Source of the DNA: Mizuhopecten yessoensis
Taxonomy: Eukaryota
Assembly: GCF_002113885.1 (NCBI RefSeq)
Contig: NW_018404383.1
Span: 66,965-130,964, forward strand
Length of the DNA: 64,000 nucleotides
Direction of reading: 5' to 3'
The translations under genes were made by a program, and so were the position numbers. Each line of letters begins with the position of its first letter. Positions within the stretch are counted from its first letter, which is position 1. This document shows positions 23,721-56,011 of this stretch, in pieces. The notes below the pieces were generated by a model that was not told where the DNA came from, ran no database searches, and saw only the letters and a program-made list of their open reading frames with translations.

Positions 23721-26200
23721 TGTTGGGTTTTGTAGTAAGGTGACCGTTATTGCCATACTGTAGATAGACGTGTTGTATTTTTTAGTAAGGTGACCATTAT
23801 TGCCATACTGTATATAGACGTGTTTAGTTTTGTAGTAAGGTGACCGTTATTGCCACACTGTAGATAGACGTGTTTAGTTTTGTAGTAAGGTAACCATTAT
23901 TGCCATACTGTAGATAGACGTGTTGAGTTTTGTAGTAAGGTAACCATTATTGCCATACTGTAGATATACCTGTTTAGTTTTGTAGTAAGGTAACCATTAT
24001 TGCCATACTGTAAATAGACGTGTTTAGTTTTGTAGTAAGGTGACCGTTATTGCCATACTGTAGATAGACGTGTTTAGTTTTGTAGTAAGGTGACCGTTAT
24101 TGCCAAACTGAAGATAGATGTGTTGAGTTTTGTAGTAAGGTAACCATTATTGCCATACTGTTGATATACCTGTTTAGTTTTGTAGTAAGGTAACTATTAT
24201 TGCCATACTGTAGATATACCTGTTTAGTTTTGTAGTAAGGTGACCGTTATTGCCATACTGTAGATAGACGTGTTTAGTTTTGTAGTAAGGTGACCGTTAC
24301 TGCCATACTGTAGATGAACGTGTTGAGTTTTGTAGTAAGGTGACCCTCATTGCCATACTGTAGATAGACGTGTTCAGTTTAAGAGTAAGGTAACCATTAT
24401 TGTCATACTGTAGATAAACGTGTTGAGTTTTGTAGTAAGGTGCCGTTATTGACATACTGTAGATAAACGTGTTGAGTTTTGTAGTAAGGTGACCCTTATT
24501 GCAATACTGTAGATAGACGTGTTTGGTTTCGTAGTAAGGTGACCCTAATTGCCATACTGTAGATAGATGTGTTTAGTTTTGTAGTAAGGTAACCATTATT
24601 GCCATACTGTAGATATACCTGTTTGATTTGTAGTAAGGTAACCATAATTGCCATAATGTAGATAGACATGTTAAGTTTTGTAGTAAGGTAACCATTTTTG
24701 CCATACTGTAGATAGACGTGTTTAGTTTTGTAGTAAGGTAACCATTATTGCCATACTGTAGATAGACGTTATTAGTTTTGTAGTAAGGTAACCATTATTG
24801 CCATACTGTAGATAGATGTGTTTAGTTTTGTAGTAAGGTGATCGTTATTGCCATACCGTAGATAGACGTGTTGAGTTTTGTAGTAAGGTGACCATTATTG
24901 CCATACTGTAGATAGATGTGTTTAGTTTTGTAGTAAGGTGACCCTAATTGCCATACTGTAGATAGACGTGTTGAGTTTCGTAGTAAGGTGACCATTATTG
25001 CCATACTGTAGATAGACGTGTTTAGTTTTGTAGTAAGGTGATCGTTATTGCCATACTGTAGATAGACATGTTGAGTTTCGTAGTAAGGTGACCATTATTG
25101 CCATACTGTAGATAGACATGTTGAGTTTTGTAGTAAGGTGACCATTATTGCCATACTGTAGATAGACATGTTGAGTTTTGTAGTAAGGTAACCACTATTG
25201 CCATACTGTAGATAGACGTGTTGAGTTTTGTAGTAAGGTGACCACTATTGCCATACTGTAGATAGACGTGTTTAGTTTTGTAGTAAGGTAACCATTATTG
25301 CCCTACTGTAGATAGACGTGTTGAGTTTCGTAGTAAGGTGACCATTATTGCCATACTTTAGATAGATGTGTTTAGTTTTGTAGTAAGGTAACCATTATTG
25401 CCATAATGTAGATGGACATGTTAAGTTTTGTAGTAAGTGACCATTTTTGCCATACTGTAGATAGACGTGTTCAGTTTAAGAGTAAGGTAACCATTATTGT
25501 CATACTGTAGGTAAACGAGTTGATTTTTGAAGTAAGGCGACGTTATTGACATACTGTAGATAAACGTGTTGAGGTTTGTAGTAAGGTGACCATTATTGCC
25601 ATACTGTAGATAGACGTGTTGGGTTTTGTAGTAAGGTGCCGTTATTGACATACCGTAGATAAACGTGTTGAGTTTTGTAGAAAGGTGCCGTTATTGACAT
25701 ACTGTAGATAAACGTGTCGAGTTTTGTAGTAAGGTGCCGTTATTGACATTCTGTAGATAAACGTGTTGAGTTTTGTAGTAAGGTGATCATTATTGCCATA
25801 CTGTAGATAGACGTGTTGAGTTTTGTAGTAAGGTGATCATTATTGCCATACTGTAGATAGACGTGTTGAGTTTTGTAGTAAGGAGACCATTATTGCCATA
25901 CTGTATATAGACGTGTTTAGTTTTGTAGTAAGGCAACCATTATTGCCTAACTGTAGATATACATATTTAGTTTTGTAGTAAGGTGACCCTCATTGCCATA
26001 CTGTAGATAGGCGTGTTGAGTTTTGTAGTAAGTTAACCATTATTGCCATACTGTAGATAGACGTGTTTAGTTTTGTAGTAAGGTAACCATTATTGCCTAA
26101 CTGTAGATATACGTATTTAGTTTTGTAGTAAGGTAACCAGTATTGCCATACTGTAGATAGACGTGTTTAGTTTTGTCGTAAGGTGACCATTACTGCCATA
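23721..26200. repeat. Minisatellite, 50-bp unit, ~49 copies
   Basis: Unit tgtagtaaggtgaccattattgccatactgtagatagacgtgtttagttt. Confidence 0.98.
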
Positions 26201-27907
26201 CGGTCTTTTTTGTTTCGTTCGATCTCACCTAGTATTTACTGAAACATGATCCGTGCTCTATCTTTTGAGGTGCTTTATTTGTGGGTGGCAAATAATGGCG
26301 ATGCCAGCGCCATTTCTCAATTAAATTGTCAAAGTAGTTTTATCTGCGTAATAACCCCGCAGTACAATGACACGTCTTAATTGTTTTTACTGGGGTGGGA
26401 AGGTGTTTGCCACGTTATGACTGCCAACATTTATATGTCATATATAGAATGTGTGTCGCATGTGCTATGTATGATATAAAAAGTGCACGAGACCAATAAA
26501 AAACATTTTCGACCGACAATAATAGCGATAAAAACGTTTATCTTACCCAATTATTACAGCAAAGACGCATTAAAAATATTTAATGTGCATTTTGGAAATG
26601 AGAAATTCTGCAACATGTAGTAATTTGCATAAATAGAGGTTGTCTCCCTTCGTATAATCAATTCCCCTCCGCCTGCTGGGTAGTCGGTAATTCATCCTTA
26701 CTTATTTAGCAGCTACTTGAAGCAATTCAGTCTGCACCACACTGATGTATGTGCACTTGACATGGACAATGGTGATCTCAAGTGCCCGTGGATTGCACGT
26801 CCTTGACATGATGTACTCTGGGGATCCCCTTGAATACGCGATGTTTAACCACAAAGGAGTATTTATGTGCCAATACTTACGGATTAAGTTAAATCCGTAT
26901 CATAAAATCTCAATAAACAGTACTTCTAATATTACTCATGTTTGACCAGATATAGTACTTGCATTGTATGTATATTTATAAAAGCGTCAGATAAGATGAT
27001 CATTATAAGTTGACAGCTGTGTATATACTACAGAGACAATAACGGCCGTTTTATGCAGATAAGGATATATGAATTGAGCTGGTCAGAGCCACTCGACCGT
27101 CCTGTGTTTACGGACCCCTACAACGAATAACCTAGTTCACAAGCAAGATCCTCAAGATATATTTGGCAGTTTCAGAAAAAAAATCCTCTTATGAATTTTG
27201 ATAGGGAGGCTTTGGATGGGTATCAGTGTGTTTTGGGCAGCGATGCAGAAACGGGTGTTTGTAAACAATGGCGAAAAAGCAAGGTGTTTGAAGATCGACA
27301 AGAACTGCTATGACAAGTGGGGCCCGACGGATCCTCCAATTATTTGGGGTTAATCACGTGACAGCGATCTATCTGCCTGGATGGACAATGGTTCTACTTA
27401 CCAACCTTACACGTCAAGGTCGCACGCTCACCTCGCCTCAGACTCGGGGCCTTTTGTTGGCAGACTTCTCGCTTAGTTTGTTCCCCTCTCTCTTGCCACC
27501 ACAGTAGATTTTCACAATCTAAACACGGCTTCGTCATGCATAAAATGTAGATTTTATAGTTAGACCATATCTATGGCCGCGCCTTACTACGACGGGTGGA
27601 AACATAAGTTGATGCTCAAACAGACGGGTGATGTAAAGTATTAGAAAACAGGTGTTGATCGCGAACACACCAAGGTTGCTTCAAATTTCAAAACAAGTTT
27701 AGTATACTGTATATAGAGAGGGGTCCTCGTAAAACATTTGTCTATAACCATGTTCAATGGCAGCATTTTATAATTCCTTTTAACTGCTTAATCGTGAAGT
27801 ATGCTGAATAGCAAAAAGGGTTAAATCTGTCTGCCATAGAGCAAAAGTATTAAGCTGAGGAGATTGTATTGAAATGAGAATGCGACATTCTGAAACACAA
27901 CTTACGT

Positions 27908-28045: not shown

Positions 28046-28129
28046 CATTGTAAGTTCCGTGCTATCGTGTGTCATATACAATATACATTGTAACTCCGAA
28101 GCATTTGTAGGTTCCTAGGTACGATGTTA

Positions 28130-29440
28130 TTGTTCCGTGGTATGATGTTTCATTTCTATGGTAAAATGATAAGTTTCTGGTGTTTGATGTTTACGTTCCG
28201 TGGTATGATGATTCGTTTCTGTGGTATAATGATACGTTTCCGGTGTTTGATGTTTACGTTCCGTGGTATGATGATTCGTTTCTGTGGTATAATGATACGT
28301 TTCCGGTGTTTATGTTTATGTTCCGTGGTATGATGTTTCGTTTCTATGGTATAATGATACGTTTCCGGTGTTTGATGTTTATGTTCCGTGGTATGATGAT
28401 TCGTTTCTGTGGTATAATGATACGTTTCCGGTGTTTATGTTTATGTTCCGTGGTATGATGTTTCGTTTCTATGGTATAATGATACGTTTCCGGTGTTTGA
28501 TGTTTATGTTCCGTGGTATGAGGTTTCGTTTCTGTGGTATAATGATTAGTTTCCGGTGTTTGATGTTTAGTTTCCGTGGTATGATGTTTCGTTTCTGTGG
28601 TATAATGATACGTTTCCGGTGTTTATGTTTATGTTCCGTGGTATGAGGTTTCGTTTCTGTGGTATAATGATTAGTTTCCGGTGTTTGATGTTAAGTTTCC
28701 GTGGTATGATGTTTCGTTTCTGTGGTATAATGATACGTTTCCGGTGTTTATGTTTATGTTCCGTGGTATGAGGTTTCGTTTCTGTGGTATAATGATTAGT
28801 TTCCGGTGTTTGATGTTAAGTTTCCGTGGTATGATGTTTCGTTTCTGTGGTATAATGATACGTTTCCGGTGTTTATGTTTATGTTCCGTGGTATGATGTT
28901 TCGTTTCTGTGGTATAATGATACGTTTCCGGTGTTTATGTTTACGTTCCGTGGTATGATGTTTCGTTTCTGTGGTATAATGATACGTTTCCGGTGTTTAT
29001 GTTTACGTTCCGTGGTATGATGATTCGTTTCTATGGTATAATGATAAGTTTTCAGTGTTTTTTGTTTAGTTTCCGTGGTATGATGTTTCGTTTCTGTGGT
29101 ATAATGATAAGTTTCCGGTATTTGATGTTAAGTTTCCGTGGTATGATGTTTCGTTTCTGTGGTATAATGATTAGTTTCCGGTGTTTGATGTTTACGTTTC
29201 GTGGTATGATGTTTAGTTTCTGTTGTATAATGATAAGTTTCCAGTGTTTATGTTTACGTTCCGTGGTATGATGTTTCGTTTCTTTGGTATAATGATTAGT
29301 TTCCGGTGTTTGATGTTTACGTTTCGTGGTATGATGTTTAGTTTCCTTGGTATGATGTTTCGTTTCTGTTGTATAATGATAAGTTTCCGGTGTTTGATGT
29401 TTACGTTTCGTGGTATGATGTGTAGTTTCTATGATATTAT
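28130..29440. repeat. Higher-order minisatellite, 62-63-bp unit made of three ~21-bp subunits, ~21 copies
   Basis: ttccgtggtatgatgtttcgt / ttctgtggtataatgatacgt / ttccggtgtttgatgtttatg. Confidence 0.97.
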
Positions 29441-33250: not shown

Positions 33251-33866
33251 TAGTCATAACAAATACCACTTTCATAACGATAACACAGCTCTCACCCAAA
33301 CAGACGCATACATACAATGAACAACACTCTACCACGCCGCGCACCAGCATGCACGTGCTGCTGCCAGCCCGAAATGTTCTACTCACTATGGCAAATATCA
33401 ACTACAATGGTTCGTAAAGCCATTTGTGTCGTCTCGTCAGTGTCCAGTGTTTTTTTCTTAAACTTCCTTAAATGACTGGTAGCGTTAAACTAAAAAGTTT
33501 GGAAAGACCATGTTGTCTTTCCGCGTTGGATTGTGTTTCTGTCTTTAGCGTGCTTAAATGTATATCGGACGAATAACTCGCCCAGACGTGCACACAAGAC
33601 GGACACCAGCGTCCGTTACTGAACACATAAATCTACCTTGGTACTGCTAGCACGAAATGCCTGTGGATTTCTGGGAGACGCTGCCTCCCGCGCACACTTG
33701 TCATGCTTTTTGCTTGAATGTCCGCCGCCACGGAGCCTTGTGTTACAGGGAATGTTGACAGTACTGGCAGTACGCTCATCCAATAACAACAATAAATGCA
33801 GTATTATAATATTCATAATTAATAATATATCACAACACATAAGCACGGGTCTGTGTCTTTAGATCA

Positions 33867-33928
33867 TTGCACGCATCCTTATCACGACACCGCCCGTGCA
33901 CAAGTCCTGTCTCGACGGGCGGTCTATA
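33867..33928 (+). repeat. 62-bp inverted repeat, copy A (downstream of the trunk-like stop codon)
   Basis: ttgcacgcatccttatcacgacaccgcccgtgcacaagtcctgtctcgacgggcggtctata is the reverse complement of 36402-36463 with 3 substitutions. Confidence 0.95.
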
Positions 33929-34197
33929 TTTACTGGCTACACAACGTCGTCCCCTCCCCCCATCCCCGGCCCCCACTGGATTTCATAACATATGTAATAA
34001 ATATATGGACTCTGGGTAGTACACATAGGCCGCAGAGTCAGCCAGGCCTGTCCTTAGTAGCAACAGGTGGAATGGAACCTCCTTCGAGAGAAATATCTCT
34101 GCTAAAAGTAATCCATTGGGTTGCGGCACCATTGTATCACAGTTGGCGCATGCGCAAGAACACGTCACTGTCACGGAAAATCCCTAGTTTATAAATA

Positions 34198-35124
34198 TCA
34201 CACGTCCCTCGGCCGTCTCCGTCGGTTTTTCCGCTTACGTTTGTTTTTAGGATTGCCACATTCGCACCAAACGTTAACATGTAGTTTCTCGAACACCCAA
34301 ACCTCCTCATACGTCGTGTTGACCCCCACTGTAGGGACCGGGTTACAACGATTAGGGTCCATCTTAAACAAGTTGATTGTGTATCCCTGCTCAACGCATT
34401 CGTTTAACTTATAATAACACAATTTTGTTAAACATTCCACGGAATTATAATACTTGGGAAAATACCCTGGTTTAGTTTTATTCCATATCTTTTTCATCTT
34501 ACACTTCCATGACAAGTGGTCTTTCCTTTTAAGTTTTTGTTTTTGTTTTCGCCTCCTTCCACTGCGGGGGCCCGCTCGCTTATGTCTTACATTTAATTGC
34601 ATTAATCTTTGGTAAAATGTCACATCCTCGTCGAAATCGTCATCGTCATCGTCCTCCTCCTCCTCCTCAACAACCGCTCGTCGTTTTCTCTTCCTCATGA
34701 ATTTCATAGAATCTAAATACGCAGAGTCCTGCGTTTGAACCGTTCTGTCTTGTGAGTTTCCATAACCACCATCACTCATCATTGTGTTCGAAATCGAATC
34801 AATATTCGAGTCGAAATCATCCACAGAATCATCGAATTCATCATCATCATCGTTCTCGAAATCATCGTCGTCCTCTATAGAACGCTCTCGTAACGTGCTT
34901 CTTTTCATATCCTCCTCGTCCATTGCCATCCTCGACTCGTCGTAGTGTCTGCCCATTCGGTAGCGCAGATGATCTGGGTCGACAGGACGACAACGGGGCA
35001 CGGTTATTTCCGTGATGTTATTGAGCTTGGTTGGCGGCGGGCGTTTTCTCGGGTAGGCCAACACGGGGCTTGTCAGCATCACAAAACAGATCACGAGGAA
35101 CAGAAACTCGCTGGTTCTCTTTGC
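34198..35124 (-). CDS. trk: Trunk-like (Trunk/PTTH/Noggin superfamily) secreted cystine-knot ligand, main coding exon (308 aa + stop)
   Basis: Hydrophobic signal segment FLFLVICFVMLTSPVLA. N-terminal motif CRPVDPDHLRYRMGRHYDESRMA matches the Trunk/Noggin C-x-L-x-LG-x-F-x-YMS helix motif. The C-terminal domain WKCKMKKIW..GYFPKYYNSVEC..KLCYY..NEC..YTINLFK..C..YEEVWVFEKLHVNVWCEC follows the insect Trunk pattern (WxC, YFPRYxxSxEC, CWY, WxxE, CEC). Furin-type sites RKRKRR and RHKR. The ORF track gives 34198..35160, but the first 12 codons read as an intron 3' end (cttctctcctgtttgctgttgcag|GCA). Confidence 0.9.
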   Translation of the reverse strand, partial: AKRTSEFLFLVICFVMLTSPVLAYPRKRPPPTKLNNITEITVPRCRPVDPDHLRYRMGRHYDESRMAMDEEDMKRSTLRERSIEDDDDFENDDDDEFDDSVDDFDSNIDSISNTMMSDGGYGNSQDRTVQTQDSAYLDSMKFMRKRKRRAVVEEEEEDDDDDDFDEDVTFYQRLMQLNVRHKRAGPRSGRRRKQKQKLKRKDHLSWKCKMKKIWNKTKPGYFPKYYNSVECLTKLCYYKLNECVEQGYTINLFKMDPNRCNPVPTVGVNTTYEEVWVFEKLHVNVWCECGNPKNKRKRKNRRRRPRDV

Positions 35125-36401
35125 CTGCAACAGCAAACAGGAGAGAAGACATTTAATCATTGTGGATCATTTGAAATATAACAATGTATAAAGAAAAAGA
35201 ATCATAGATGGTTCCATTGGTGTTTACCTCATAAAGATTGGTTTCTTGAGTCGGACAAGAGTGGGTGTGTTCCTTATTGCGAAGCAGTAAGTACAGAAAC
35301 AACGACACGCCTATTTGGATAGTATTTGTATTAGCTAAACTCAATCACATGCTTACGATAAGGCCAAGAGTTTACATGATTGCGATACGGTCATACTGGG
35401 GTGACGATTGAGCTAATTTAGCAAATACGAAACACGAGGCATAGCTTTGATTAACACTATAATGCATTTTGAGACAACAACAAACCAATTCCTTCGTTTT
35501 CGATCTGATCTTCATGCGAATGAAAATAAGTCAACTGGTAGGACCACTCACACTTTAAGGCAAACTAGTACAGAGTGTATCTAAAAGCTGCTGGTCTTGT
35601 CAAGAACAACCATATGCCATCACTATTGTAGAAAATAGAAATGACAAGATGAAGTTGATATCTGCAATTCACTGTTTTCGCTAAAGTATTGGATAGAGTA
35701 GGGACGTGCTGTGTGTCGCATCAACTTCAACTTTCTGATAAATTATCATGAATATCGGCGCGCTCTTGATGTCTCTATCAGATCAAACTCTCTTGTCAAA
35801 GGTCACCTCGTACCAAATTCACAAGATATGTTACAACAGTTGCTTGTTGTTCTCCGTTTATTTTCTAATTTGTATACATAATGTTTGTATAAGATCATTT
35901 CTACTTATTTGAATGGAATAGCAGTGATAAGGGTAATAAATCCATGATCAATTAATATGACGTTACATTACAGATGGTTGTGTAGGAGGTGTGCGACAGC
36001 TTTCATCGTTATGTTCACATTTTCTTATTCAGGTTAGCGGATTTTGGCTAAAAAAAAGTCCGAATGTTGTCTTTTTTTCCAATTCGATTTAAAACTTTGA
36101 TTCTATATAATAAATGTGATGTAAGAAACATGTCATCTTCTAAACTACATCACAACATAAACAATATACATCCAATAATTATTTAATTGATAACGTTTGC
36201 AACATTACGCTGATAACTGACTTTCAAAATAATTTGTAAGCTTTCATATTGAAAAATAAGCAAGTTTCAGTTTAAAGCAGCTCAGATTAATACGATTCAC
36301 GTCACATTTAACGAATCACCTTACCCATCCCCAACTATGTCAAATGGTATAAAGGTTGTACAGGATGCAATATGCACACATATTCGTCACAGGGATGTTG
36401 T

Positions 36402-36463
36402 TATAGACTGCCCGTCGAGACAGGACTTGTGCACGGGCGGTGTTGTAATAAGGATGCGTGCAA
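36402..36463 (-). repeat. 62-bp inverted repeat, copy B (in the predicted intron)
   Basis: tatagactgcccgtcgagacaggacttgtgcacgggcggtgttgtaataaggatgcgtgcaa; 59/62 identical to the reverse complement of copy A. Confidence 0.95.
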
Positions 36464-39400
36464 ATGTTCGGTTTCTGTTTTATCTTTAAATGTTCAATAG
36501 GTTATCATAATATCGTCAGATACTACTATAGTAGTATGCACATTCAGTTCGGCAGAACTCGTGTACGACAATGGCTTTTAGTGTAACATGTGTACAAATG
36601 TTTGCAAGATATTATCCGGAATCGACCAATATATGCTAGTAGGTTAACATACATATTCGTTCCGCGTTTTTTTATTCTGCTCGAATTTTAGGATTTTCAT
36701 ATCCGTTTCATTACCCAAATAATCTTAAAAGGCGTGAAAAGTCATGCAATCAAGATTAATTGATTAACACCACCCAAAACTGCAGAAATTGCGAAATAGT
36801 CAGTATATGTACACTTGTGTAATATACGAACACAAGAATACATCTGTGTAATATTATATGAAAACGTTTTAAAGGGACAAATCATGATCACTCCAAGAAC
36901 ATATTTGCGAAAAAGATTTCAACTGAAAGAAAATAGTTTCAGAGTGTTGTATTTTGGAAATATGATTCCATATTTCTTAGTATACGTGTTTTCTTAGCCA
37001 AGTTGATAATTCGTGTCCCCCTATACAAACGTTGGTTAAATGACAGAATTCTCAATAAACTGATTCGTACGTGTATGATATCTGTCAAATATACCTTTGA
37101 AACTGTGGCGTTCCAGGTATTATTGTAAAGAATGTCGAGATTATTTTGCATGAGCGGAAAATGAAACGACTGAAAATGTGGTGAATACGTGATCACACTC
37201 CAAAGATCGTCTCTAGTGCCTCAAGGAGAAAACACATTAACTTCGACTACGACTTAGTATCACTTGAGTTCAGCTGTGCGTGTAGAACGATCGGCATGTT
37301 TGAAAAAACGGCCGGAACACTGATAGAAAATGTTACTATCCACACGTATTATACGGTTCGAAGACTTAAAACAATTACTTAAATTTAATTCTTAATTTGT
37401 TTAACGAGGATTACGAACAGCCCAGGGGCTACTAGCCTACTAACTCTTCACACGTATTCAACTGATATGCAACTGCTGACTGATAAAACGCGGGTTGGAT
37501 ACATTTCAAAATTAGAGAAAAACATTACCGAAAACTGATTCCAAACACTCATAACTTAAAAATAGATATGAATATCCTAAAAATGTCAGAGAATGTTAAT
37601 TCCTGGTGTAAGTACCTGTGCACCGTCGTGCGGTTACAACGGTTTCATACCAGTCAATGTTTACCAACCTTTAACGTGCGGAATTCAAAAGCTAGGTAAA
37701 TATGAAATATATGACAGGTGAAACTCATGTTTTAATTGATTTATACACATTTTTATTTATATTTTACATCTAATTATTGACTTTTTGAGATGTTTTGTTT
37801 GTCACTTGATGTAGGAACTTCCATTCCATTACAACGACCCCTTGAACCAGATTCATATTGATATCCCACCTTTGCAGGTTGTGGCGACTACGACCAACAC
37901 ATCCCAGTGGGGGTGAGAAGGGAGGACTTCAAAACTCTTTATGTAGTATTGATACTCCAAGCTCCTGTAGAAACTTAACTAAATCTTAGTTGACATTCAT
38001 GGTAAGCCTTTCTTGGATGCACCCAATTGAGTATTTTCTGACTCCCGGGGAACTGTTAAAATATCCCATCGATATTCAGGGAACGCCTCTCTAAGTAGCG
38101 CCCACTAGCACGGAAACTGGTACAATTTTACCCTCGACACTCATAGGACATTCAGAGAACACCTCTGTATGATGTACTAAGTAGTATGGTCTGACCCCGG
38201 GGACACTTATAAATTCTTACTCGACATTCCCACTATCATCATCAAGTATTACCGGACGCCTGGACCGGAATACGATAACATTATTAGTCATTCAAGCAGA
38301 TAATATATACATGCAGAAAACAGTTCGATAAAGTCTGATGGCAGTGCATGTGTAGCACGGTGACGTCAGCTAAAGAGCATGATCTAATCAAGCTAGTATC
38401 TAATGGTATTGTCACAACAGTAGACGACGTCATCAACAAAACAATGAAATGGTAGGAAAATATGGTTTTATACGAATATTAATATAATAACGATTTTATA
38501 TTTATAAATATCAACCACTTAACTTAAAAAGATTGTTTTTGATTTGACATGGTGAAGTTTGATCTGTATCTATATCAATATCTTAGTCTTTATCAAATCA
38601 TCGATTTTTGGGGAATGTAAATTTTCGATTATTCACATTGAGAAAGAAGTTTTTTTAGAATATAATAGTTGTAAGTACAGTTGTACTTTAGAAATAAGAG
38701 GACAACAGAAAATATTATAAAATATTACCCAAGTGGCGTTACCGTTAAGTTTCCCGTGTTTCCCATGTCTGTCCATTCGTCCAGTTATAAATTGACACTG
38801 ACATTGTTTTATAATACTACTCGCACGAGACCGTTCTCTTATGTGTCGAGAATCTCCAGCAGGTTGTCTATTTATCTCACGATTTGACTGTGGTCTGAAG
38901 TACTTTAAATACGCCCCCTAATCTGTCGTAACTCAATGTAATATAAAAATAAGTATGCGTCATCACGTTAAAAAGAAGGTTTCCCCAGCATACTTCAAAT
39001 TCTCGGTTAAAGACAAGATGTCAATACAATCCCATATATAGCCTGGAGTGTTTGTAGTGACTTCGCTAAAAAAAGCTTCCGAAACCAGCGAGCAACTCCG
39101 ATAAAAGGGTTTATTTAAATTTGGGTGTTGGCCGTTTCAATTAAAGCGATATATGTGAAGGGTACTCCACGCTATTTAACGTACGGAATGCTATTTTCTA
39201 TTTTACCGTTATAATTGTTCATGTGACTAAATCCGCATGTCAAATTTCAGATTTCATCAGCTTTCAAAATATCAGAACAGTGGGTTCAAGCGTGTGATAC
39301 AGTCGGATTGGCGTACTTTAATAACACCTGGATTAACCTATGAATCAGTTAAAATGTGTTCTTAAGAGTTACAGGCAGGTGAAATTACACACAGTCTGAC

Positions 39401-42773: not shown

Positions 42774-42869
42774 CTGTGTCACAATCAAAGGAGAAAACAT
42801 TTCACGACCATTGGAACAGTAACAAGGACTTCTCACAACTGTGTTGGTTAGCAGTCTATGTGGAATCAT
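42774..42869 (-). CDS. Predicted first coding exon of the trunk-like gene (MIPHRLL...MFSPLIVTQ; alternative in-frame ATG at 42800)
   Basis: Donor CAG|GTACGT at 42774/42773 is phase 0, matching the phase-0 acceptor at 35124. Splicing gives (M..)MFSPLIVTQ-AKRTSEFLFLVICFVMLTSPVLA. It lies ~300 nt downstream of a TATA/Inr pair in a GC-richer, repeat-free stretch. Predicted intron 35125..42773 (7649 bp). Confidence 0.6.
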
Positions 42870-47894: not shown

Positions 47895-50800
47895 AACACA
47901 CTGAATACTTTTAATATTGATACAGTACCACACTCTATACTCTCTTTGCTGATACACTACCACACTATATACTCTCTTAACTGAAACACTACTACACTGT
48001 ATGCTATCTTAACTAATACACTACCACACTATATACTCTCTTAACTGAAACACTACCACACTGAATGCTATCTTAACTAATACACTACCACACTATATGC
48101 TGTCTTAACTGAAACACTTCCACACTCTATACTCTCTTAACTGATACACTACTATACTCTCTTAAATGATACACTAACACACTGTATACTCCCTTAACTG
48201 ATACATGACCACACTATATACTCTCTTAACTGATACACCACTGTATACTATCTTAACTGATACACTACCTTACCGTATACTCCCTTAACTGATACATTAC
48301 CACACTATATACCCTCTTAACTGATACACTAACACACTTTACACTCTCTTAACTGATACACTACCACAATCTATACTCTCTTAACTGATACACTACCACA
48401 CTATATACTCTCTTAACTGATACACTAACACACTGTACACTCTCTTAACTGATACACTACCACACTCTATGCTCTCTTAACTGATACACTAAAACACTGT
48501 ACACTTTCTTAACTGATACACTACAACACTAGAAGCTCTCTTGACTGATACACTACCACACTAGAAACTCTCTTGACTGATACACTACAACACTAGATAC
48601 TAACTTAACTGATACACTACCACACTGTATACTCTCTTAACTGATACACTACAACACTCTTTACCCTCTTTACTGATACACTACCACACCCTACACTCTC
48701 TTAACTGATACACTACTACACTATATACGCTCTTAACTGATACACTACCACAATCTATACTCTCTTAACTGATACACTACCATACTGTATACTCACTTAA
48801 CTGATACACTACCACACTAAATACTCTCTTAACTGATACACTACCATACTGTATACTCTCTTAACTGATACACTACCACACTAGATACTAACTTAACTGA
48901 TACACTACCATATTCTATACTCTCTTAACTGATACAGTATCACCCTCTTTACTCTCTTAACTGATACACTACCACACTGTATAATCTCTTAACTGATATA
49001 CTACCACACTATATACTCTCTTAACTGATACACTATCACCCTCTTTGCTCTCTTAACTGATACACTACCACACTCTATACTCTCTTAACTGATACACTAC
49101 CACACTATATACTCTTAACTGATACACTATTACACTGTATACTCTCCTAACTGATACACTACCACACTATATACTCTCTTAACTGATACACTATCACCCT
49201 CTTTGCTCTCTTAACTGATACACTACCACACTCTATACTCTCTTAACTGATACACTATTATACTGTACACTCTCTTAACTGATACACTATTACACTGTAT
49301 ACTCTCTTACATGATACAGTACCACACTCTATACTCTCTTACCTGATACACTACCACACTGAATACTATCTTAACTGATACACTACCACACTCTATACTC
49401 TCTTAACTGATACACTACCACACTGAACACCCTCCTAACTGATACACTGCCACACTGTATACTCTCTTAACTGATACACTACCACACTCTATACTCTCTT
49501 CACTGATTTACTACCACACTGAACACTCTCCTAACTGATACACTGCCACACTGTATACTCTCTTAAATGATACACTACCACACTCTATACTCTCCTAACT
49601 GATACACTGCCACACTGTGTATTCTCTTAACTGATACACTGCCACACTGTATACTCTCTTACCTGATACACTACCACACTATATACTCTCTTAACTGATA
49701 CATTGCCACATTGTATTCTCTCTTATCTGATAAACTACCACACTCTATACTATCTTAACTGATACACTGCCACACTGTATACTCTCTTAACTGATACACT
49801 ACCACACTCTATACTCTCTTAACTGATACACTACCACACTGTATACTCTCTTAACTGATACACTGCCACACTGTATACTCTCTTAACTGATTCACTGCCA
49901 CACTGTATACTCTCTTACCTGAAACAGTGCCACACTCTATACTCTCCTAACTGATACACTACCACACTCTATACTCTCTTAACTGATACACTACCACACT
50001 CTATACTCTCTTAACTGATACACTACCACACTGTATACTCTCTTAACTGATACACTGCCACACTGTATACTCTCTTAACTGATTCACTGCCACACTGTAT
50101 ACTCTCTTACCTGAAACAGGGCCACACTCTATACTCTCCTAACTGATACACTACCACACTCTATACTCTCTTAACTGACACATTACCATACTGTATACTC
50201 TCTTAACTGATACACTCCCACACTATATACTCTCTTAACTTATACACTACCACACTATATATTCTCTTAACTGATACACTATCACCCTCTTTACTCTCTT
50301 AACTGATACACTACCACACTATATACTCTCTTAACTGATACACTACCACACTATATACTCTCTTAACTGATACACTACCACACTATATATTCTCTTGACA
50401 CTGACACACTACCATACTGTATACTCTCTTAACTGATACAGTACGGTACTGAATACTCACTTAATCGAAACACTACCCCACTGAATGCTTTCTAAACTGA
50501 TACACTACCAGACAGAATACTTCCAATAAACTGATACACTACCACACCGAATACTTTTTAAACTGATACATTACGGCACTGAAAACTCTCTAAACTGATA
50601 TACTACTACACTGAATACACACTAAACTGATACACTACCAAACCGAATACTTTCTAAACTGATACACCACAACACCGAATACTCTCTAAACTGATACACT
50701 ACCACACCGAATACTCTCTGAGCTGGTAGAGTACGGCACTGAATACTCTCTAAACTGATAGAGTAAGGCACTGGACACTCTGTAAACTGATACAATACCA

Positions 50801-50970
50801 CACTGAATACTTTCAATAAATTGATACACTACCATACTGAATACTTTATAAACTGATACACTACAACACTGAATACTCTCTAAACTGATACACGTTCACA
50901 CTAAATACTCTCTAAACTGATAGAGTATCAAACTGAATACTCTACAAACTGACACAGTACTACACTGAAC
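47895..50970. repeat. Minisatellite, 32-bp unit, ~95 copies
   Basis: Unit ctcttaactgatacactaccacactgtatact; drifts to a ctctaaactgata..ctgaatact variant after ~50440. Confidence 0.98.
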
Positions 50971-53045
50971 AGTAGGTAGTACTAAACATTACAAATATAG
51001 TATAAGTAGTACTAAACACTACAGATACAGTAGGAATTAATAAACACTACTGATACAGTAGGTAGTACCTAAACACTACAGATACAGTAGGTAATACTCA
51101 ACACCACATATATAGTAAGTAGTACTAAACACCACAGATACACTGGGAAGTACTAAAGACCACATATATAGTGGAAAGTACTAAACATCTTAGATATAGT
51201 AGGTAATGCTCAACACCACACATACAGTGGGAAGTATTAAACACCACAGATACAGTAGGTAGTACTAAACACCACAGATACAGTAGGAAGCACTAAACAC
51301 TACAGATACAGTGGGAAGAACTAAACACCGCAGATACGGTAGGTAGCACTAAACACTACAGATACAGTGGGAAGAACTAAACACCACAGATACAGTAGGT
51401 AGCACTAAACACCACAGATACAGTGGGAAGTACTAAACACCACAGATACAGTAGGTAGTATTAAACACCACAGATACAGAAGGTAGTACTAAACACCACA
51501 GATACAGTAGGAAGTACTAAACACCACAGATACAGTAGGTAGTACTAAACACCACAGATACAGTAGGTAGTACTAAACACCACAGATACAGTAGGTAGTA
51601 CTAAACACTACAGATACAGTGGGAAGAACTAAACACCGCAGATACAGTAGGTAGCACTAAACACCACAGATACAGTGGGAAGAACTAAACACCGCAGATA
51701 CAGTAGGTAGCACTCAACACTACAGATACAGTGGGAAGAACTAAACACCACAGATACAGTAGGTAGTACTAAACACCGCAGATACAGTAGGTAGATCTTA
51801 ACACTACAGATACAGTGGGAAGTACTAAACACCACAGATACAGTAGGTAGCACTAAACACTACAGATACAGTGGGAAGTACTAAACACAACAGATACATA
51901 AAGTGGGAAGTACCAAACACCACAGATACAGTAGGAAGTACTAAACACCACAGATACAGTAGGTAGTACTAAACACCACAGATACCGTAGGTAGTACTAA
52001 ACACCACAGATACAGTAGGTAGTACCAAACACCACAGATACAGTGGAAAGTACCAAACACCACAGATACAGTAGGTAGTACTAAACACCACAGATACAGT
52101 TGGTAGTACTAAACACCACAGATATAATAGGTAGCACTAAACACCACAGATACAGTGGGAAGTACTAAACACCACAGATACAGTGGGAAGTACTAAACAC
52201 CACAGGTACAGTAGGTAGTACCAAACACCACAGATACAGTAGGTAGTACCAAACACCACAGATACAGTGGGAAGTACTGAACACCACAGATACAGTAGGT
52301 AGTAATAAACACCACAGATACAGTAGGAAGTACTAAACACCACAGGTACAGTAGGTAGTACCAAACACCACAGATACAGTAGGGAGCACTAAACACCACA
52401 GATACAGTAGGGAGCACTAAACACCACAGATACAGTAGGTATCACTAAACACCACAGATACAGTAGGTATCACTAAACACCACAGATACAGTAGGTATCA
52501 CTAAACACCACAGATACAGTAGGTATCACTAAACACCACAGATACAGTAGGTAGCACTAAACACCCCAGATACAGTAGGTAGCACTAAACACCACAGATA
52601 TACAGTAGGAAGTACTAAACACCACAGGTACAGTAGGTAGTACTAAACACCACAGATACAGCAGGTAGCACTAAACACCACAGATACAGGAGGTAGCACT
52701 AAACACCACAGATACAGGAGGTAGCACTAAACACCACAGATACAGAAGGTAGTACTAAACACCAGATACAGTAGGTAGTACTAAACACCCCAGATACAGT
52801 AGGTAGTACTAAACACCCCAGATACAGTAGGTAGTACTAAACACCAGCGATACAGTAGGTAGTACCAAACACCACAGATACAGTAGGTAGTACTAAACAC
52901 CACAGATACAGTAGGTAGTACTAAACACTACAGAACCAATAGGTAGATCTTAACACTACAGATACTGTGGGAAGTACTACATATCACAGATACAGTAGGT
53001 TGTACTAATTACCACAGATACAGTAGGTAGTACTAAACACTACAG
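50971..53045. repeat. Minisatellite, 28-bp unit, ~74 copies, directly abutting the 32-bp array
   Basis: Unit actaaacaccacagatacagtaggtagt, with a gtgggaag variant. Confidence 0.98.
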
Positions 53046-54852: not shown

Positions 54853-56011
54853 GATGTCCCGGGTGTGGTATGTACAGGGTAGTATGTCCCGAGTGTGTTA
54901 TGTACAGGGTGGTATGTCCCGGGTGTGGTATGTACAGGGTGGTATGTCCAGGGTGTGGTATGTACAGGGGAGTATGTCCCGGGGGTGGTATGTACAGGGT
55001 AGTATGTCCCGGGTGTGGTATGTACAGGGTAGTATGTCAGGGACGTGGTATGTACAGGGTAGTATGTCCCGGGTGTGGTATGTACAGGGAAGTATGTCTC
55101 GAGTGTGGTATGTACAGGGCAGTATGTCCCGGGTGTGGTATGTACAGGGTAGTATGTCAGGGACGTGGTATGTACAGGGGAGTATGTCCCGGGTGTGGTA
55201 TGTACAGGGGAGTATGTCCCGGGGGTGGTATGTACAGGGTAGTATGTCCCGGGTATGGTATGTACAGGGCAGTATGTAGCGGTTGTGATATGTACAGGGT
55301 AGTATGTCCCGGATGTGGTATGTACAGGGCAGTATGTTCCGGGTGTGGTATGTACAGGGTAGTATGTCTCGAGTGTGGGATGTACAGGGTAGTATGTCCC
55401 GGGTGTGGTATGTGCAGGGTAGTATGTCCCGGATGTGGTATGTACAGGGTAATATGTCCCGGGTGTGGTATGTACAGGGAAGTATGTCTCGAGTGTGGTA
55501 TGTACAGGGCAGTATGTCCCGGGTGTGGTATGTACAGGGTAGTATGTCCCGGGTGTGGTATGTACAGGGAAGTATGTCCCGGATGTGGTATGTACATGGC
55601 AGTATGTCACTGGTGTGGTATGTACAGGGCAGTATGTCCCGGGTATGGTATGTACAGGGTAGTATGTCCCGGGTATGGTATGTACAGGGTAGTATATCCC
55701 GGGTATGGCATGTACAGGGTAGTATGTCCCGGGTGTGGTATGTACAGGGTGGTATGTCCCGGTTGTGGTATGTACATGGTAGTATGTCACGGGAGTGGTA
55801 TTTACACGGTAGTATGTCCCAGGTGTGGTATGTACAGGGCAGTATGTCCCGGGAGTGGTATGTAATGGGGAGTATGTCTCGGGTGTGGTATGCACAGGGT
55901 AGTATGTCCCGGGTGTGGTATGTACAGGGTAGTATGTCCCGGGTATGGTATGTACAGGGTAGTGTGTCCCGCATGTGGTATATACAGGGTAGTATGTCCC
56001 GGGTGTGGTAT
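54853..56011. repeat. Minisatellite, 30-bp unit (14+16 dimer), ~38 copies, no indels
   Basis: Unit tgtacagggtagtatgtcccgggtgtggta stays in perfect register over 1.16 kb. Confidence 0.98.

What the first reader, a model, noticed from the sequence alone, without database searches (positions are those of the whole stretch)
34198..35124. Non-arthropod Trunk-like ligand with Noggin-like features and an acid/base bipartite precursor
Seen: the cystine knot has Trunk-type signatures (YFPKYYNSVEC, CYY, WVFE, CEC). It is preceded by a basic run (RRRKQKQKLKRK) at the position of Noggin's heparin-binding segment, and the mature N-terminus has an RPPP motif faintly like Noggin's BMP-binding clip (RPAP). 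The precursor has two long Asp/Glu tracts separated by RKRKRR, then RHKR, then a 125-aa very basic domain ending KNKRKRKNRRRRPRDV. Known: Trunk and PTTH activate the Torso RTK after proteolysis, Noggin antagonises BMP, and the families are homologous. Inference: the acidic pro-region masks the two basic patches until stepwise convertase cleavage releases a heparan-sulfate-tethered ligand. This may be a little-studied molluscan Torso-type or dual RTK/BMP signal.
Basis: partly seen in the sequence, partly recalled or inferred. Interest (0 to 1): 0.75.

Follow-up and report, generated by a model that had tools for sequence, protein, structure and literature searches.

The report
Scallop Trunk gene, already catalogued
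This is the main coding exon of the Yesso scallop's Trunk gene, a secreted cystine-knot signalling-protein precursor that is already named "Protein trunk" in databases and listed as PTTH/Trunk in a 2019 paper, so its identity is not new, although its acidic and basic layout is real and conserved in molluscs.

Summary
Transcript contigs from four studies splice an upstream exon (42774-42869) onto it.

The Trunk assignment is correct but already known. UniProt calls the product "Protein trunk". The identical sequence (PY_T08319) is labelled PTTH/TRUNK in de Oliveira et al. 2019, which also lists a scallop Torso receptor and a separate scallop Noggin.

- A bivalve-only profile of the knot hits only Bombyx PTTH in the PDB (E 1e-4).
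- A wider family profile gives PTTH 1.5e-10 and Noggin 3e-3.
- Named dipteran Trunk proteins belong to the same family.

The Noggin-like claims are half right. The basic run does sit where Noggin's basic segment sits. RPPP is confined to pectinids and does not align with Noggin's clip. It is predicted to fold against the knot and is followed by a conserved KR-S site like the furin site needed in Drosophila Trunk.

Acidic linker, pre-knot basic run and polybasic tail are conserved in the molluscan clade and rare in the insect Trunk clade. The charge-masking and heparan-sulfate mechanism remains untested.

The parts
42774..42869 (-). Coding part of first exon, isoform X1 (MIPHRLLTNTVVRSPCYCSNGREMFSPLIVTQ), followed by a GT donor. 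This is the form seen in transcripts.
   Evidence: Peptide of P0227 located in the window. Sequence with CAG|gtacgt donor. The loose ends of contigs in 4 runs read REMFSPLIVT.
38729..38776 (-). Alternative first coding exon, isoform X2 (MDRHGKHGKLNGNATW), followed by a GT donor.
   Evidence: No contig of the four runs laid covers it.
34198..35124 (-). Coding part of the last exon, with the stop codon at 34198-34200. The acceptor AG is at 35125-35126.
35056..35124 (-). Signal-peptide core (AKRTSEFLFLVICFVMLTSPVLA); cleavage inferred before YPRK.
   Evidence: Read from the sequence. Predicted helix 17-33 of P0001. The cleavage point is an inference.
34900..35055 (-). N-terminal module, residues 36-87. 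It contains the invariant Cys57, the motif LRYRMGRHYDESRMA, and the conserved K86-R87|S site (34900-34905).
   Evidence: Alignment A4. Present in 112 family sequences, including named dipteran Trunk. Best PDB hit is Noggin 35-59, E 0.09. pLDDT 96-97. Drosophila K75R76 KRSS site from PMC4640135.
34576..34899 (-). Acidic linker, residues 88-195. It has two Asp/Glu tracts and furin-type sites RKRKRR (34678-34695) and RHKR (34576-34587). The conserved motif is DSMKFMR+K+R.
   Evidence: Charge counts. Invariant S151, K153, M155 and R156 among bivalves. pLDDT about 50, so probably disordered.
34522..34575 (-). Pre-knot basic run, residues 196-213 (AGPRSGRRRKQKQKLKRK), at the position of Noggin's basic segment.
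   Evidence: Profile alignment to 1M4U residues 107-118. Pfam Noggin stretch 168-246. 90% of the molluscan-type clade has at least 6 K/R in 12 residues here.
34258..34521 (-). Cystine-knot domain, residues 214-301, with 7 Cys.
   Evidence: PTTH 5AOQ is the only PDB hit of the bivalve profile, E 1e-4. The family profile gives 1.5e-10. AF2 model pLDDT 90-98. Best Foldseek hit is 5aoq_M.
34201..34257 (-). Polybasic C-terminal tail, residues 302-320, with 11 K/R in 19 residues.
   Evidence: At least 6 K/R in the first 20 tail residues in 53% of the molluscan-type clade, against 1% of the insect Trunk clade.
33500..34197 (-). 3' UTR. It extends at least 303 nt below 33500 in one contig.
   Evidence: Contig record 1 of run X1 is collinear from 33500 to 35127.

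Best explanation
This is the scallop Trunk gene, a member of the Trunk/PTTH branch of the Noggin cystine-knot superfamily. One of two alternative small first exons is spliced to one large exon. That exon encodes most of a secreted precursor, in this order:
1. signal peptide
2. a folded N-terminal module with one conserved Cys
3. a disordered, strongly acidic linker bounded and interrupted by dibasic or furin-type sites (KR|S, RKRKRR|A, RHKR|A)
4. a basic run
5. a 7-Cys knot
6. a polybasic tail

The most likely mechanism is cleavage by furin-type convertases in the secretory pathway, as shown for Drosophila Trunk. This would release a very basic knot ligand, probably a dimer, that activates the scallop's Torso-type receptor tyrosine kinase and ERK signalling.

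Shown here: the gene structure, transcription, family membership, and conservation of the modules and charge layout.

Inferred: cleavage at these sites, dimerisation, Torso binding, and any binding of the basic patches to heparan sulfate.
For: Identity:
- 100% match to XP_021345366.1. Isoform X1 (OWF54368.1) is named 'Protein trunk'.
- The identical sequence PY_T08319 is labelled PTTH/TRUNK in the source data of PMC6660194.

Homology:
- The bivalve knot profile hits only PTTH 5AOQ in the PDB, E 1.1e-4.
- The 45-sequence family profile gives PTTH 1.5e-10 and Noggin 3.1e-3.
- The exhaustive profile search found 375 clusters at E<=1e-3.
- One of those clusters, P0145, matched at 4e-13 and sits beside named dipteran 'protein trunk' sequences in the tree.

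Shared modules:
- The N-module is shared with dipteran Trunk.
- The KR-S site matches the KRSS furin site needed for Drosophila Trunk cleavage and function.

Receptor and separate Noggin:
- A scallop Torso orthologue (PY_T17580) is listed in the paper's supplementary files.
- So is a separate scallop Noggin (XP_021380145.1).

Expression: spliced transcript contigs in four runs.
Against: - The protein scores below Pfam's Noggin cut-off (15.1 bits against 24.1).
- The knot alone matches no Pfam family.
- No receptor binding, cleavage or expression pattern was tested.
- My tree has no canonical Noggin or PTTH rows and is rooted only at its midpoint. It shows clustering, not orthology to insect Trunk as against 'Noggin-like' proteins.
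- The N-module is predicted to pack on the knot as in Noggin, so the 'pro-region' may not simply be discarded.
Confidence: 0.78

Rival explanations
1. It is a two-chain, Noggin-fold ligand made by excising the linker. Convertases cut at KR87 and at RHKR195 (and RKRKRR161) and remove the acidic linker, much as the C-peptide is removed from proinsulin. The N-module stays attached to the knot, possibly through a Cys57-Cys272 disulfide. The mature ligand may then act on Torso, on BMP, or on both.
For: - The N-module has pLDDT 96-97 while the linker is about 50.
- The full-length model's best structural matches are Noggin: 7AG0 at Z 8.9, and 1M4U at Z 8.7 with rmsd 3.6 over 104 residues spanning model 61-307. 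IL-17 scores 6.6.
- There are eight conserved Cys, an even number. Both the N-module Cys and the extra knot Cys are present in 120 of 121 sequences that carry the module.
- Dibasic sites flank the linker.
- An aphid Noggin-like protein regulates both BMP and RTK signalling (PMC9071555).
Against: - I could not read the model's coordinates, so the Cys57-Cys272 distance is unknown.
- Both Cys are nearly invariant, so covariation says nothing.
- From my own knowledge (Casali and Casanova 2001), a C-terminal Trunk fragment alone activates Torso in flies.
- The scallop has a separate canonical Noggin.
- No clip is present.
Confidence: 0.15
2. It is a BMP antagonist or modulator of the Noggin-like type and not a Torso ligand.
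For: - Weak Pfam Noggin matches occur in 8 of 10 bivalve sequences, and some relatives pass the cut-off.
- There is a basic segment at Noggin's position.
- There is a Noggin-like N-terminal motif.
Against: - It has 7 rather than 9 knot Cys and no CxCxC ending.
- None of the 214 family sequences then held, the 150 best-scoring hits included, ends in the CxCxC of canonical Noggin.
- The family profile matches PTTH far better than Noggin.
- The clip is absent.
- A published cluster map files it with PTTH/Trunk.
Confidence: 0.05
3. It is a multi-product prohormone. The segments between the dibasic sites (88-155 and 162-191) would be released as bioactive acidic peptides alongside the knot.
For: - There are several conserved dibasic sites. 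The motif around the second site (DSMKFMR+K+R) is invariant among bivalves.
- The oyster paper treats the family as neuropeptide precursors.
Against: - The acidic tracts keep their composition but not their sequence, which fits a spacer or charge role.
- There are no amidation signals or repeated peptide units.
Confidence: 0.02

Closest known systems
Drosophila/dipteran Trunk (Torso ligand)
   Same: - Secreted precursor with the same order of parts: N-terminal C..P..L..LG..[FY][DN]..[RY]M[AS] module, a KR site after it, basic sites before the knot, then W-x-C ... C-x-C with the same Cys spacing.
- Furin cleavage at KRSS is needed in flies.
   Different: - The scallop and molluscan clade has long Asp/Glu tracts, a much stronger pre-knot basic run and a polybasic C-terminal tail. 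These are rare in the insect Trunk clade (acid tract 7%, tail 1%).
- Knot identity is only about 20-30%.
- The dipteran PFYVDDTY...PAWEV module is absent.
Bombyx PTTH (PDB 5AOQ, bound to Torso)
   Same: - Best and only sequence hit among solved structures for the knot.
- Best Foldseek hit of the knot model.
- The six knot Cys align.
   Different: - PTTH has its seventh Cys two residues before the first knot Cys, where it forms the interchain bond (my own knowledge, Ishibashi 1994).
- The scallop has Trp at that position and an extra Cys in the RCNPVP loop instead.
Vertebrate Noggin (PDB 1M4U, 7AG0)
   Same: - Same superfamily.
- Basic segment just before the first knot Cys.
- The motif [15 protein letters not shown] resembles LRYRMGRHYDESRMA.
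- Best structural match of the full-length model.
   Different: - No BMP-binding clip.
- 7 rather than 9 Cys, and no C-terminal CxCxC.
- A roughly 108-residue acidic, cleavable linker is inserted.
- The scallop has its own canonical Noggin.
Oyster Cragi-PTTH3/4 (PMC8398477)
   Same: Bivalve Trunk/PTTH precursors described as having an extra peptide region with dibasic cleavage sites and broad expression across tissues and developmental stages.
   Different: Orthology to this scallop gene was not tested here. That paper's alignment used a different scallop protein, XP_021368706.1.

Membership tests
Trunk/PTTH (Torso ligands, Noggin superfamily) | C-terminal cystine knot with the family's Cys spacing and G-Y/F-x-P, W and C-x-C landmarks | tested here: met
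   P, four Cys and W are invariant across 70 sequences that include named dipteran Trunk. The alignment to PTTH pairs the six knot Cys.
Trunk/PTTH (Torso ligands, Noggin superfamily) | Significant sequence similarity to bona fide Trunk or PTTH | tested here: met
   PTTH 5AOQ at E 1.1e-4 with the bivalve profile and 1.5e-10 with the family profile. The dipteran Trunk cluster P0145 at 4e-13.
Trunk/PTTH (Torso ligands, Noggin superfamily) | Signal peptide plus a pro-region with dibasic or furin sites upstream of the knot | tested here: met
   KR|S at 86-87, RKRKRR at 156-161 and RHKR at 192-195. Actual cleavage was not tested.
Trunk/PTTH (Torso ligands, Noggin superfamily) | N-terminal conserved module of insect Trunk | tested here: met
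   The A4 profile finds it in molluscan and named dipteran Trunk sequences.
Trunk/PTTH (Torso ligands, Noggin superfamily) | Binds and activates the Torso receptor tyrosine kinase | not testable with these tools
   A scallop Torso orthologue (PY_T17580) is listed in the PMC6660194 source data. There are no binding data.
Pfam PF05806 (Noggin, which also covers Trunk) | Score at or above the gathering cut-off of 24.1 bits | tested here: not met
   15.1 bits, E 0.021. The relatives P0023, P0029 and P0034 pass with 26-33 bits.
Canonical Noggin | N-terminal BMP-binding clip | tested here: not met
   RPPP occurs only in pectinids. The profile alignment to 1M4U starts at chain residue 35, after the clip.
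Canonical Noggin | Nine-Cys C-terminal half ending in CxCxC | tested here: not met
   The domain has seven Cys. No CxCxC ending occurs in the 214 family sequences then held.
Canonical Noggin | Basic (heparin-binding) segment just before the first knot Cys | tested here: met
   The family's basic stretch aligns with Noggin KKQRLSKKLRRK. Heparin binding itself was not tested.
IL-17 | Knot with only two disulfides, and sequence similarity to IL-17 | tested here: not met
   Six knot Cys are present. No IL-17 chain appears among the sequence hits. There is only fold-level similarity, Z 6.6, and weak Pfam IL17 hits in some relatives.

The most novel reading that the evidence does not exclude
The molluscan Trunk precursor is not a simple pro-peptide plus ligand. 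Convertases excise the disordered acidic linker. The Noggin-like N-module stays bound to the knot, possibly through a Cys57-Cys272 disulfide. The result is a two-chain, highly basic ligand retained on the matrix. It would keep the ancestral Noggin fold and might act on both Torso and BMP pathways. The acidic linker would serve as an internal charge chaperone for the two polybasic patches during secretion.
Probability: 0.15. Interest if true: 0.6.

Novelty: already known. Interest (0 to 1): 0.22.

Why it matters
The identity is already on record, so the finding adds no new gene or family.

What could still matter is modest. Molluscan Trunk precursors share a conserved acidic-linker and polybasic layout and a Noggin-like N-module that the knot-centred literature read here does not discuss. 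If the N-module stays on the ligand, or the basic patches tether it to the matrix, molluscan Trunk would be a useful intermediate for asking how one cystine-knot family split into BMP antagonists (Noggin) and receptor tyrosine kinase agonists (Trunk and PTTH). That question was raised experimentally by Karunaraj et al. 2022.

Tried and rejected
- Single-sequence search of the PDB gave only spurious designed-TPR hits to DDFDEDVTFYQRLMQLN. I rejected these as chance.
- NCBIfam gave nothing. It is a prokaryote-oriented library.
- Pfam on the knot alone gave nothing.
- Cluster look-ups gave few names, mostly 'uncharacterized'.
- Presence/absence covariation of the N-module Cys and the extra knot Cys was uninformative, because both are present in 120 of 121 sequences.
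- Model coordinates are not exposed, so no disulfide distance could be measured.
- I could not bring canonical Noggin, Drosophila Trunk or PTTH sequences into the tree, because they had no tool reference and long sequences may not be typed. The tree therefore lacks those anchors.
I used the database proteins P0001 and P0227, which equal the spliced products.
- The window holds no N.

Full report
**What is there.** The window contains no N. On the minus strand an ORF runs from 35160 to 34198 (320 aa). Its product is 100% identical over 96% of its length to XP_021345366.1, 'uncharacterized protein LOC110445202 isoform X2' of Mizuhopecten yessoensis, the Yesso scallop.

The two differ only at the N-terminus. 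The genomic sequence reads ttgcag|GCAAAG at 35125/35124, which is a splice acceptor.

Two alternative first coding exons lie upstream, each followed by GT:
- 42869-42774, isoform X1 (P0227, 340 aa)
- 38776-38729, isoform X2

Contigs from four sequencing runs of four studies cover 33500-35127. All continue with letters whose reverse complement reads REMFSPLIVT, which is the end of the X1 exon. The gene is therefore transcribed and spliced as X1, with a 3' UTR of more than 1 kb. For full-length work I used the database proteins P0001 and P0227.

**The observation.**
- Signal-peptide core, then YPRKRPPP.
- An Asp/Glu-rich stretch, then RKRKRR (156-161).
- A second Asp/Glu tract, then RHKR (192-195).
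- A 125-aa part with net charge about +23. It contains RRRKQKQKLKRK (202-213), a 7-Cys domain with GYFPKYYNSVEC, CYY, WVFE and CEC, and the tail KNKRKRKNRRRRPRDV.
- The pro-region 36-194 has net charge -20.

This is not chance. Three other pectinid proteins are 84-88% identical, and further bivalve sequences are 30-45% identical. Cys, Trp, Gly-Tyr-x-Pro and Thr-Tyr-Glu-Glu are invariant in the knot.

**Family.**
- Pfam gives only a sub-threshold Noggin match for this protein (15.1 bits against 24.1). Eight of ten bivalve homologues match weakly, and some molluscan relatives pass the cut-off.
- A profile of the bivalve knot alone (A2) finds one solved structure, Bombyx PTTH bound to Torso (5AOQ), at E 1.1e-4.
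- The exhaustive search with that profile found 375 representative clusters at E<=1e-3, always with the domain at the C-terminus.
- A 45-sequence family profile hits PTTH at 1.5e-10 and Noggin at 3.1e-3.
- A word-based search with that alignment returned proteins named 'protein trunk' from Anopheles, Chironomus and Bradysia at E about 1e-43. P0145 sits within the starred clade (96) that holds all nine named Trunk rows in the tree. The bivalve-only profile had already reached it at 4e-13.
- None of the 214 family sequences then held has Noggin's CxCxC ending, and their domains carry 7 or 8 Cys, not 9.
- In a quick maximum-likelihood tree of the knot, the scallop protein lies in a supported clade (SH-aLRT 96) of 59 rows with Octopus, Patella and Babylonia. 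That clade is separate from the clade holding dipteran Trunk. The tree has few columns, a midpoint root, and no Noggin or PTTH rows, so it shows clustering only.
- The AlphaFold model of the knot (pLDDT 74) has 5AOQ as its best Foldseek hit, followed by IL-17A and Noggin.

**Already known.**
- Isoform X1 (OWF54368.1) is named 'Protein trunk' in UniProt, entry A0A210R027.
[quoted passage not shown] 2019 (PMC6660194).
- That paper, citing Jekely 2013, states that Trunk occurs in molluscs, annelids and many other phyla, and that Torso is present in lophotrochozoans.
- Its receptor tree lists patinopectenYessoensis_PY_T17580. Its cluster file lists two more scallop ligands and a separate 'noggin-like' / 'Noggin-3' scallop protein.
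- For the oyster, four Trunk/PTTH precursors are described. Two have an additional region with dibasic sites and broad expression (PMC8398477).

'Non-arthropod Trunk-like ligand' is therefore correct but not new.

**The Noggin-like claims.**
- *Basic run: supported.* In the family-to-Noggin alignment, Noggin's KKQRLSKKLRRK lies on the family's basic stretch just upstream of the first knot Cys. The Pfam Noggin match spans it too. That this Noggin segment binds heparin is my own knowledge (Paine-Saunders 2002) and was not tested here.
- *RPPP as a clip relic: not supported.* Other bivalves have PSYIP, PSRPK or PNRPY, and Octopus has PKPIL. The profile alignment to Noggin starts at chain residue 35, after the clip.
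A profile of this module detects it in 112 family sequences at E<1e-3. These include named dipteran Trunk, for example Chironomus KKCDELSALVLNDILGAAFNSRYMS.
- *Link from that module to Noggin.* Its best hit among all PDB sequences is Noggin's [20 protein letters not shown]. The hit is weak alone (E 0.09) but collinear with the knot homology. Pfam's Noggin model also extends over it in P0029 and P0052.
- *Structure.* In the full-length AlphaFold model the module has pLDDT 96-97, the knot 90-98, and the linker about 50. The best structural matches of that model are Noggin: 7AG0 at Z 8.9, and 1M4U at Z 8.7 with rmsd 3.6 over 104 residues spanning model 61-307. IL-17 scores 6.6.

The Noggin resemblance is therefore real. 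However, it is a property of the whole Trunk family, not something special to this protein.

**Processing.** Directly after the module lies K86-R87|S. It is nearly invariant among the ten bivalve sequences, and 35 of the 46 molluscan-type sequences that carry the module have a dibasic site within 16 residues of it. Dipteran Trunks have a KR some 17-25 residues after their motif.

In Drosophila the dibasic site K75-R76 (KRSS) is critical for Trunk cleavage and function, and Furins do the cutting (PMC4640135). I infer that the scallop KR-S site is its counterpart. The second site sits in an invariant bivalve motif, DSMKFMR+K+R. RHKR is pectinid-specific in that form.

**Conservation of the charge layout**.

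| Feature | Molluscan-type clade (58 rows) | Clade with dipteran Trunk (72 rows) |
|---|---|---|
| At least 10 Asp/Glu in some 20-residue window | 72% | 7% |
| At least 6 Lys/Arg in 12 residues before the knot | 90% | 28% |
| At least 6 Lys/Arg in the 20 residues after CxC | 53% | 1% |

The layout is a lineage trait. Whether the acidic linker masks the basic patches, and whether the patches bind heparan sulfate, was not and could not be tested here.

**Cysteines.** Eight Cys are conserved: one in the N-module and seven in the knot domain. The alignment to PTTH puts Trp218 where PTTH has its interchain Cys. It leaves Cys272 (RCNPVP) without a PTTH counterpart. Both Cys57 and Cys272 are present in 120 of 121 sequences that carry the module. 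A Cys57-Cys272 bond, within one chain or between chains, is possible. This is the basis of the rival 'linker excision' reading.

**Verdict.** The clip claim is rejected and the basic-segment claim is accepted. The mechanism remains an untested hypothesis.

Noticed in passing
window 33867-33928 and 36402-36463: A 62-nt inverted repeat, 95% complementary, brackets the coding exon. The left arm lies in the 3' UTR and the right arm in the intron. Transcript contigs of three runs break at the left arm (33924-34041), as assemblers do at repeated elements. It is probably two copies of a dispersed repeat.
   Followed up: partly
window 35125-35160: The ORF's in-frame ATG and first 12 codons (MIKCLLSCLLLQ) lie upstream of the splice acceptor and are intronic. 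A mechanical ORF call would give a wrong N-terminus.
   Followed up: yes
window 23721-26201, 28124-29420, 47918-50967, 50969-53045, 54854-56011: Large minisatellite arrays with units of 50, 63/125, 32, 28 and 30 bp and up to 96 copies. They coincide with the GC-skew spikes in the composition profile.
   Followed up: no
window 35530-37424: In run X1 only, short low-depth contigs lie inside the intron (35530-36233 and 36874-37333), and there is a high-depth fragment of about 38 nt at 37386-37424. These may be unspliced RNA or repeat-derived transcripts.
   Followed up: no
window 38729-38776: The isoform X2 first exon is annotated in RefSeq, but no contig in the four runs laid covers it. X1 is the form seen, and its N-terminus is the one conserved in other pectinids (P0002, P0004).
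   Followed up: partly
P0013/P0159 (Octopus bimaculoides), P0050, P0057, P0058: Some relatives are far longer than the scallop protein. The Octopus precursor has an Asp-rich linker of over 100 residues and a long Lys/Arg region. P0050, P0057 and P0058 (649-799 aa, 17-25 Cys) carry the N-module only after 200-400 extra residues, so they may be fusions or mis-joined gene models.
   Followed up: no
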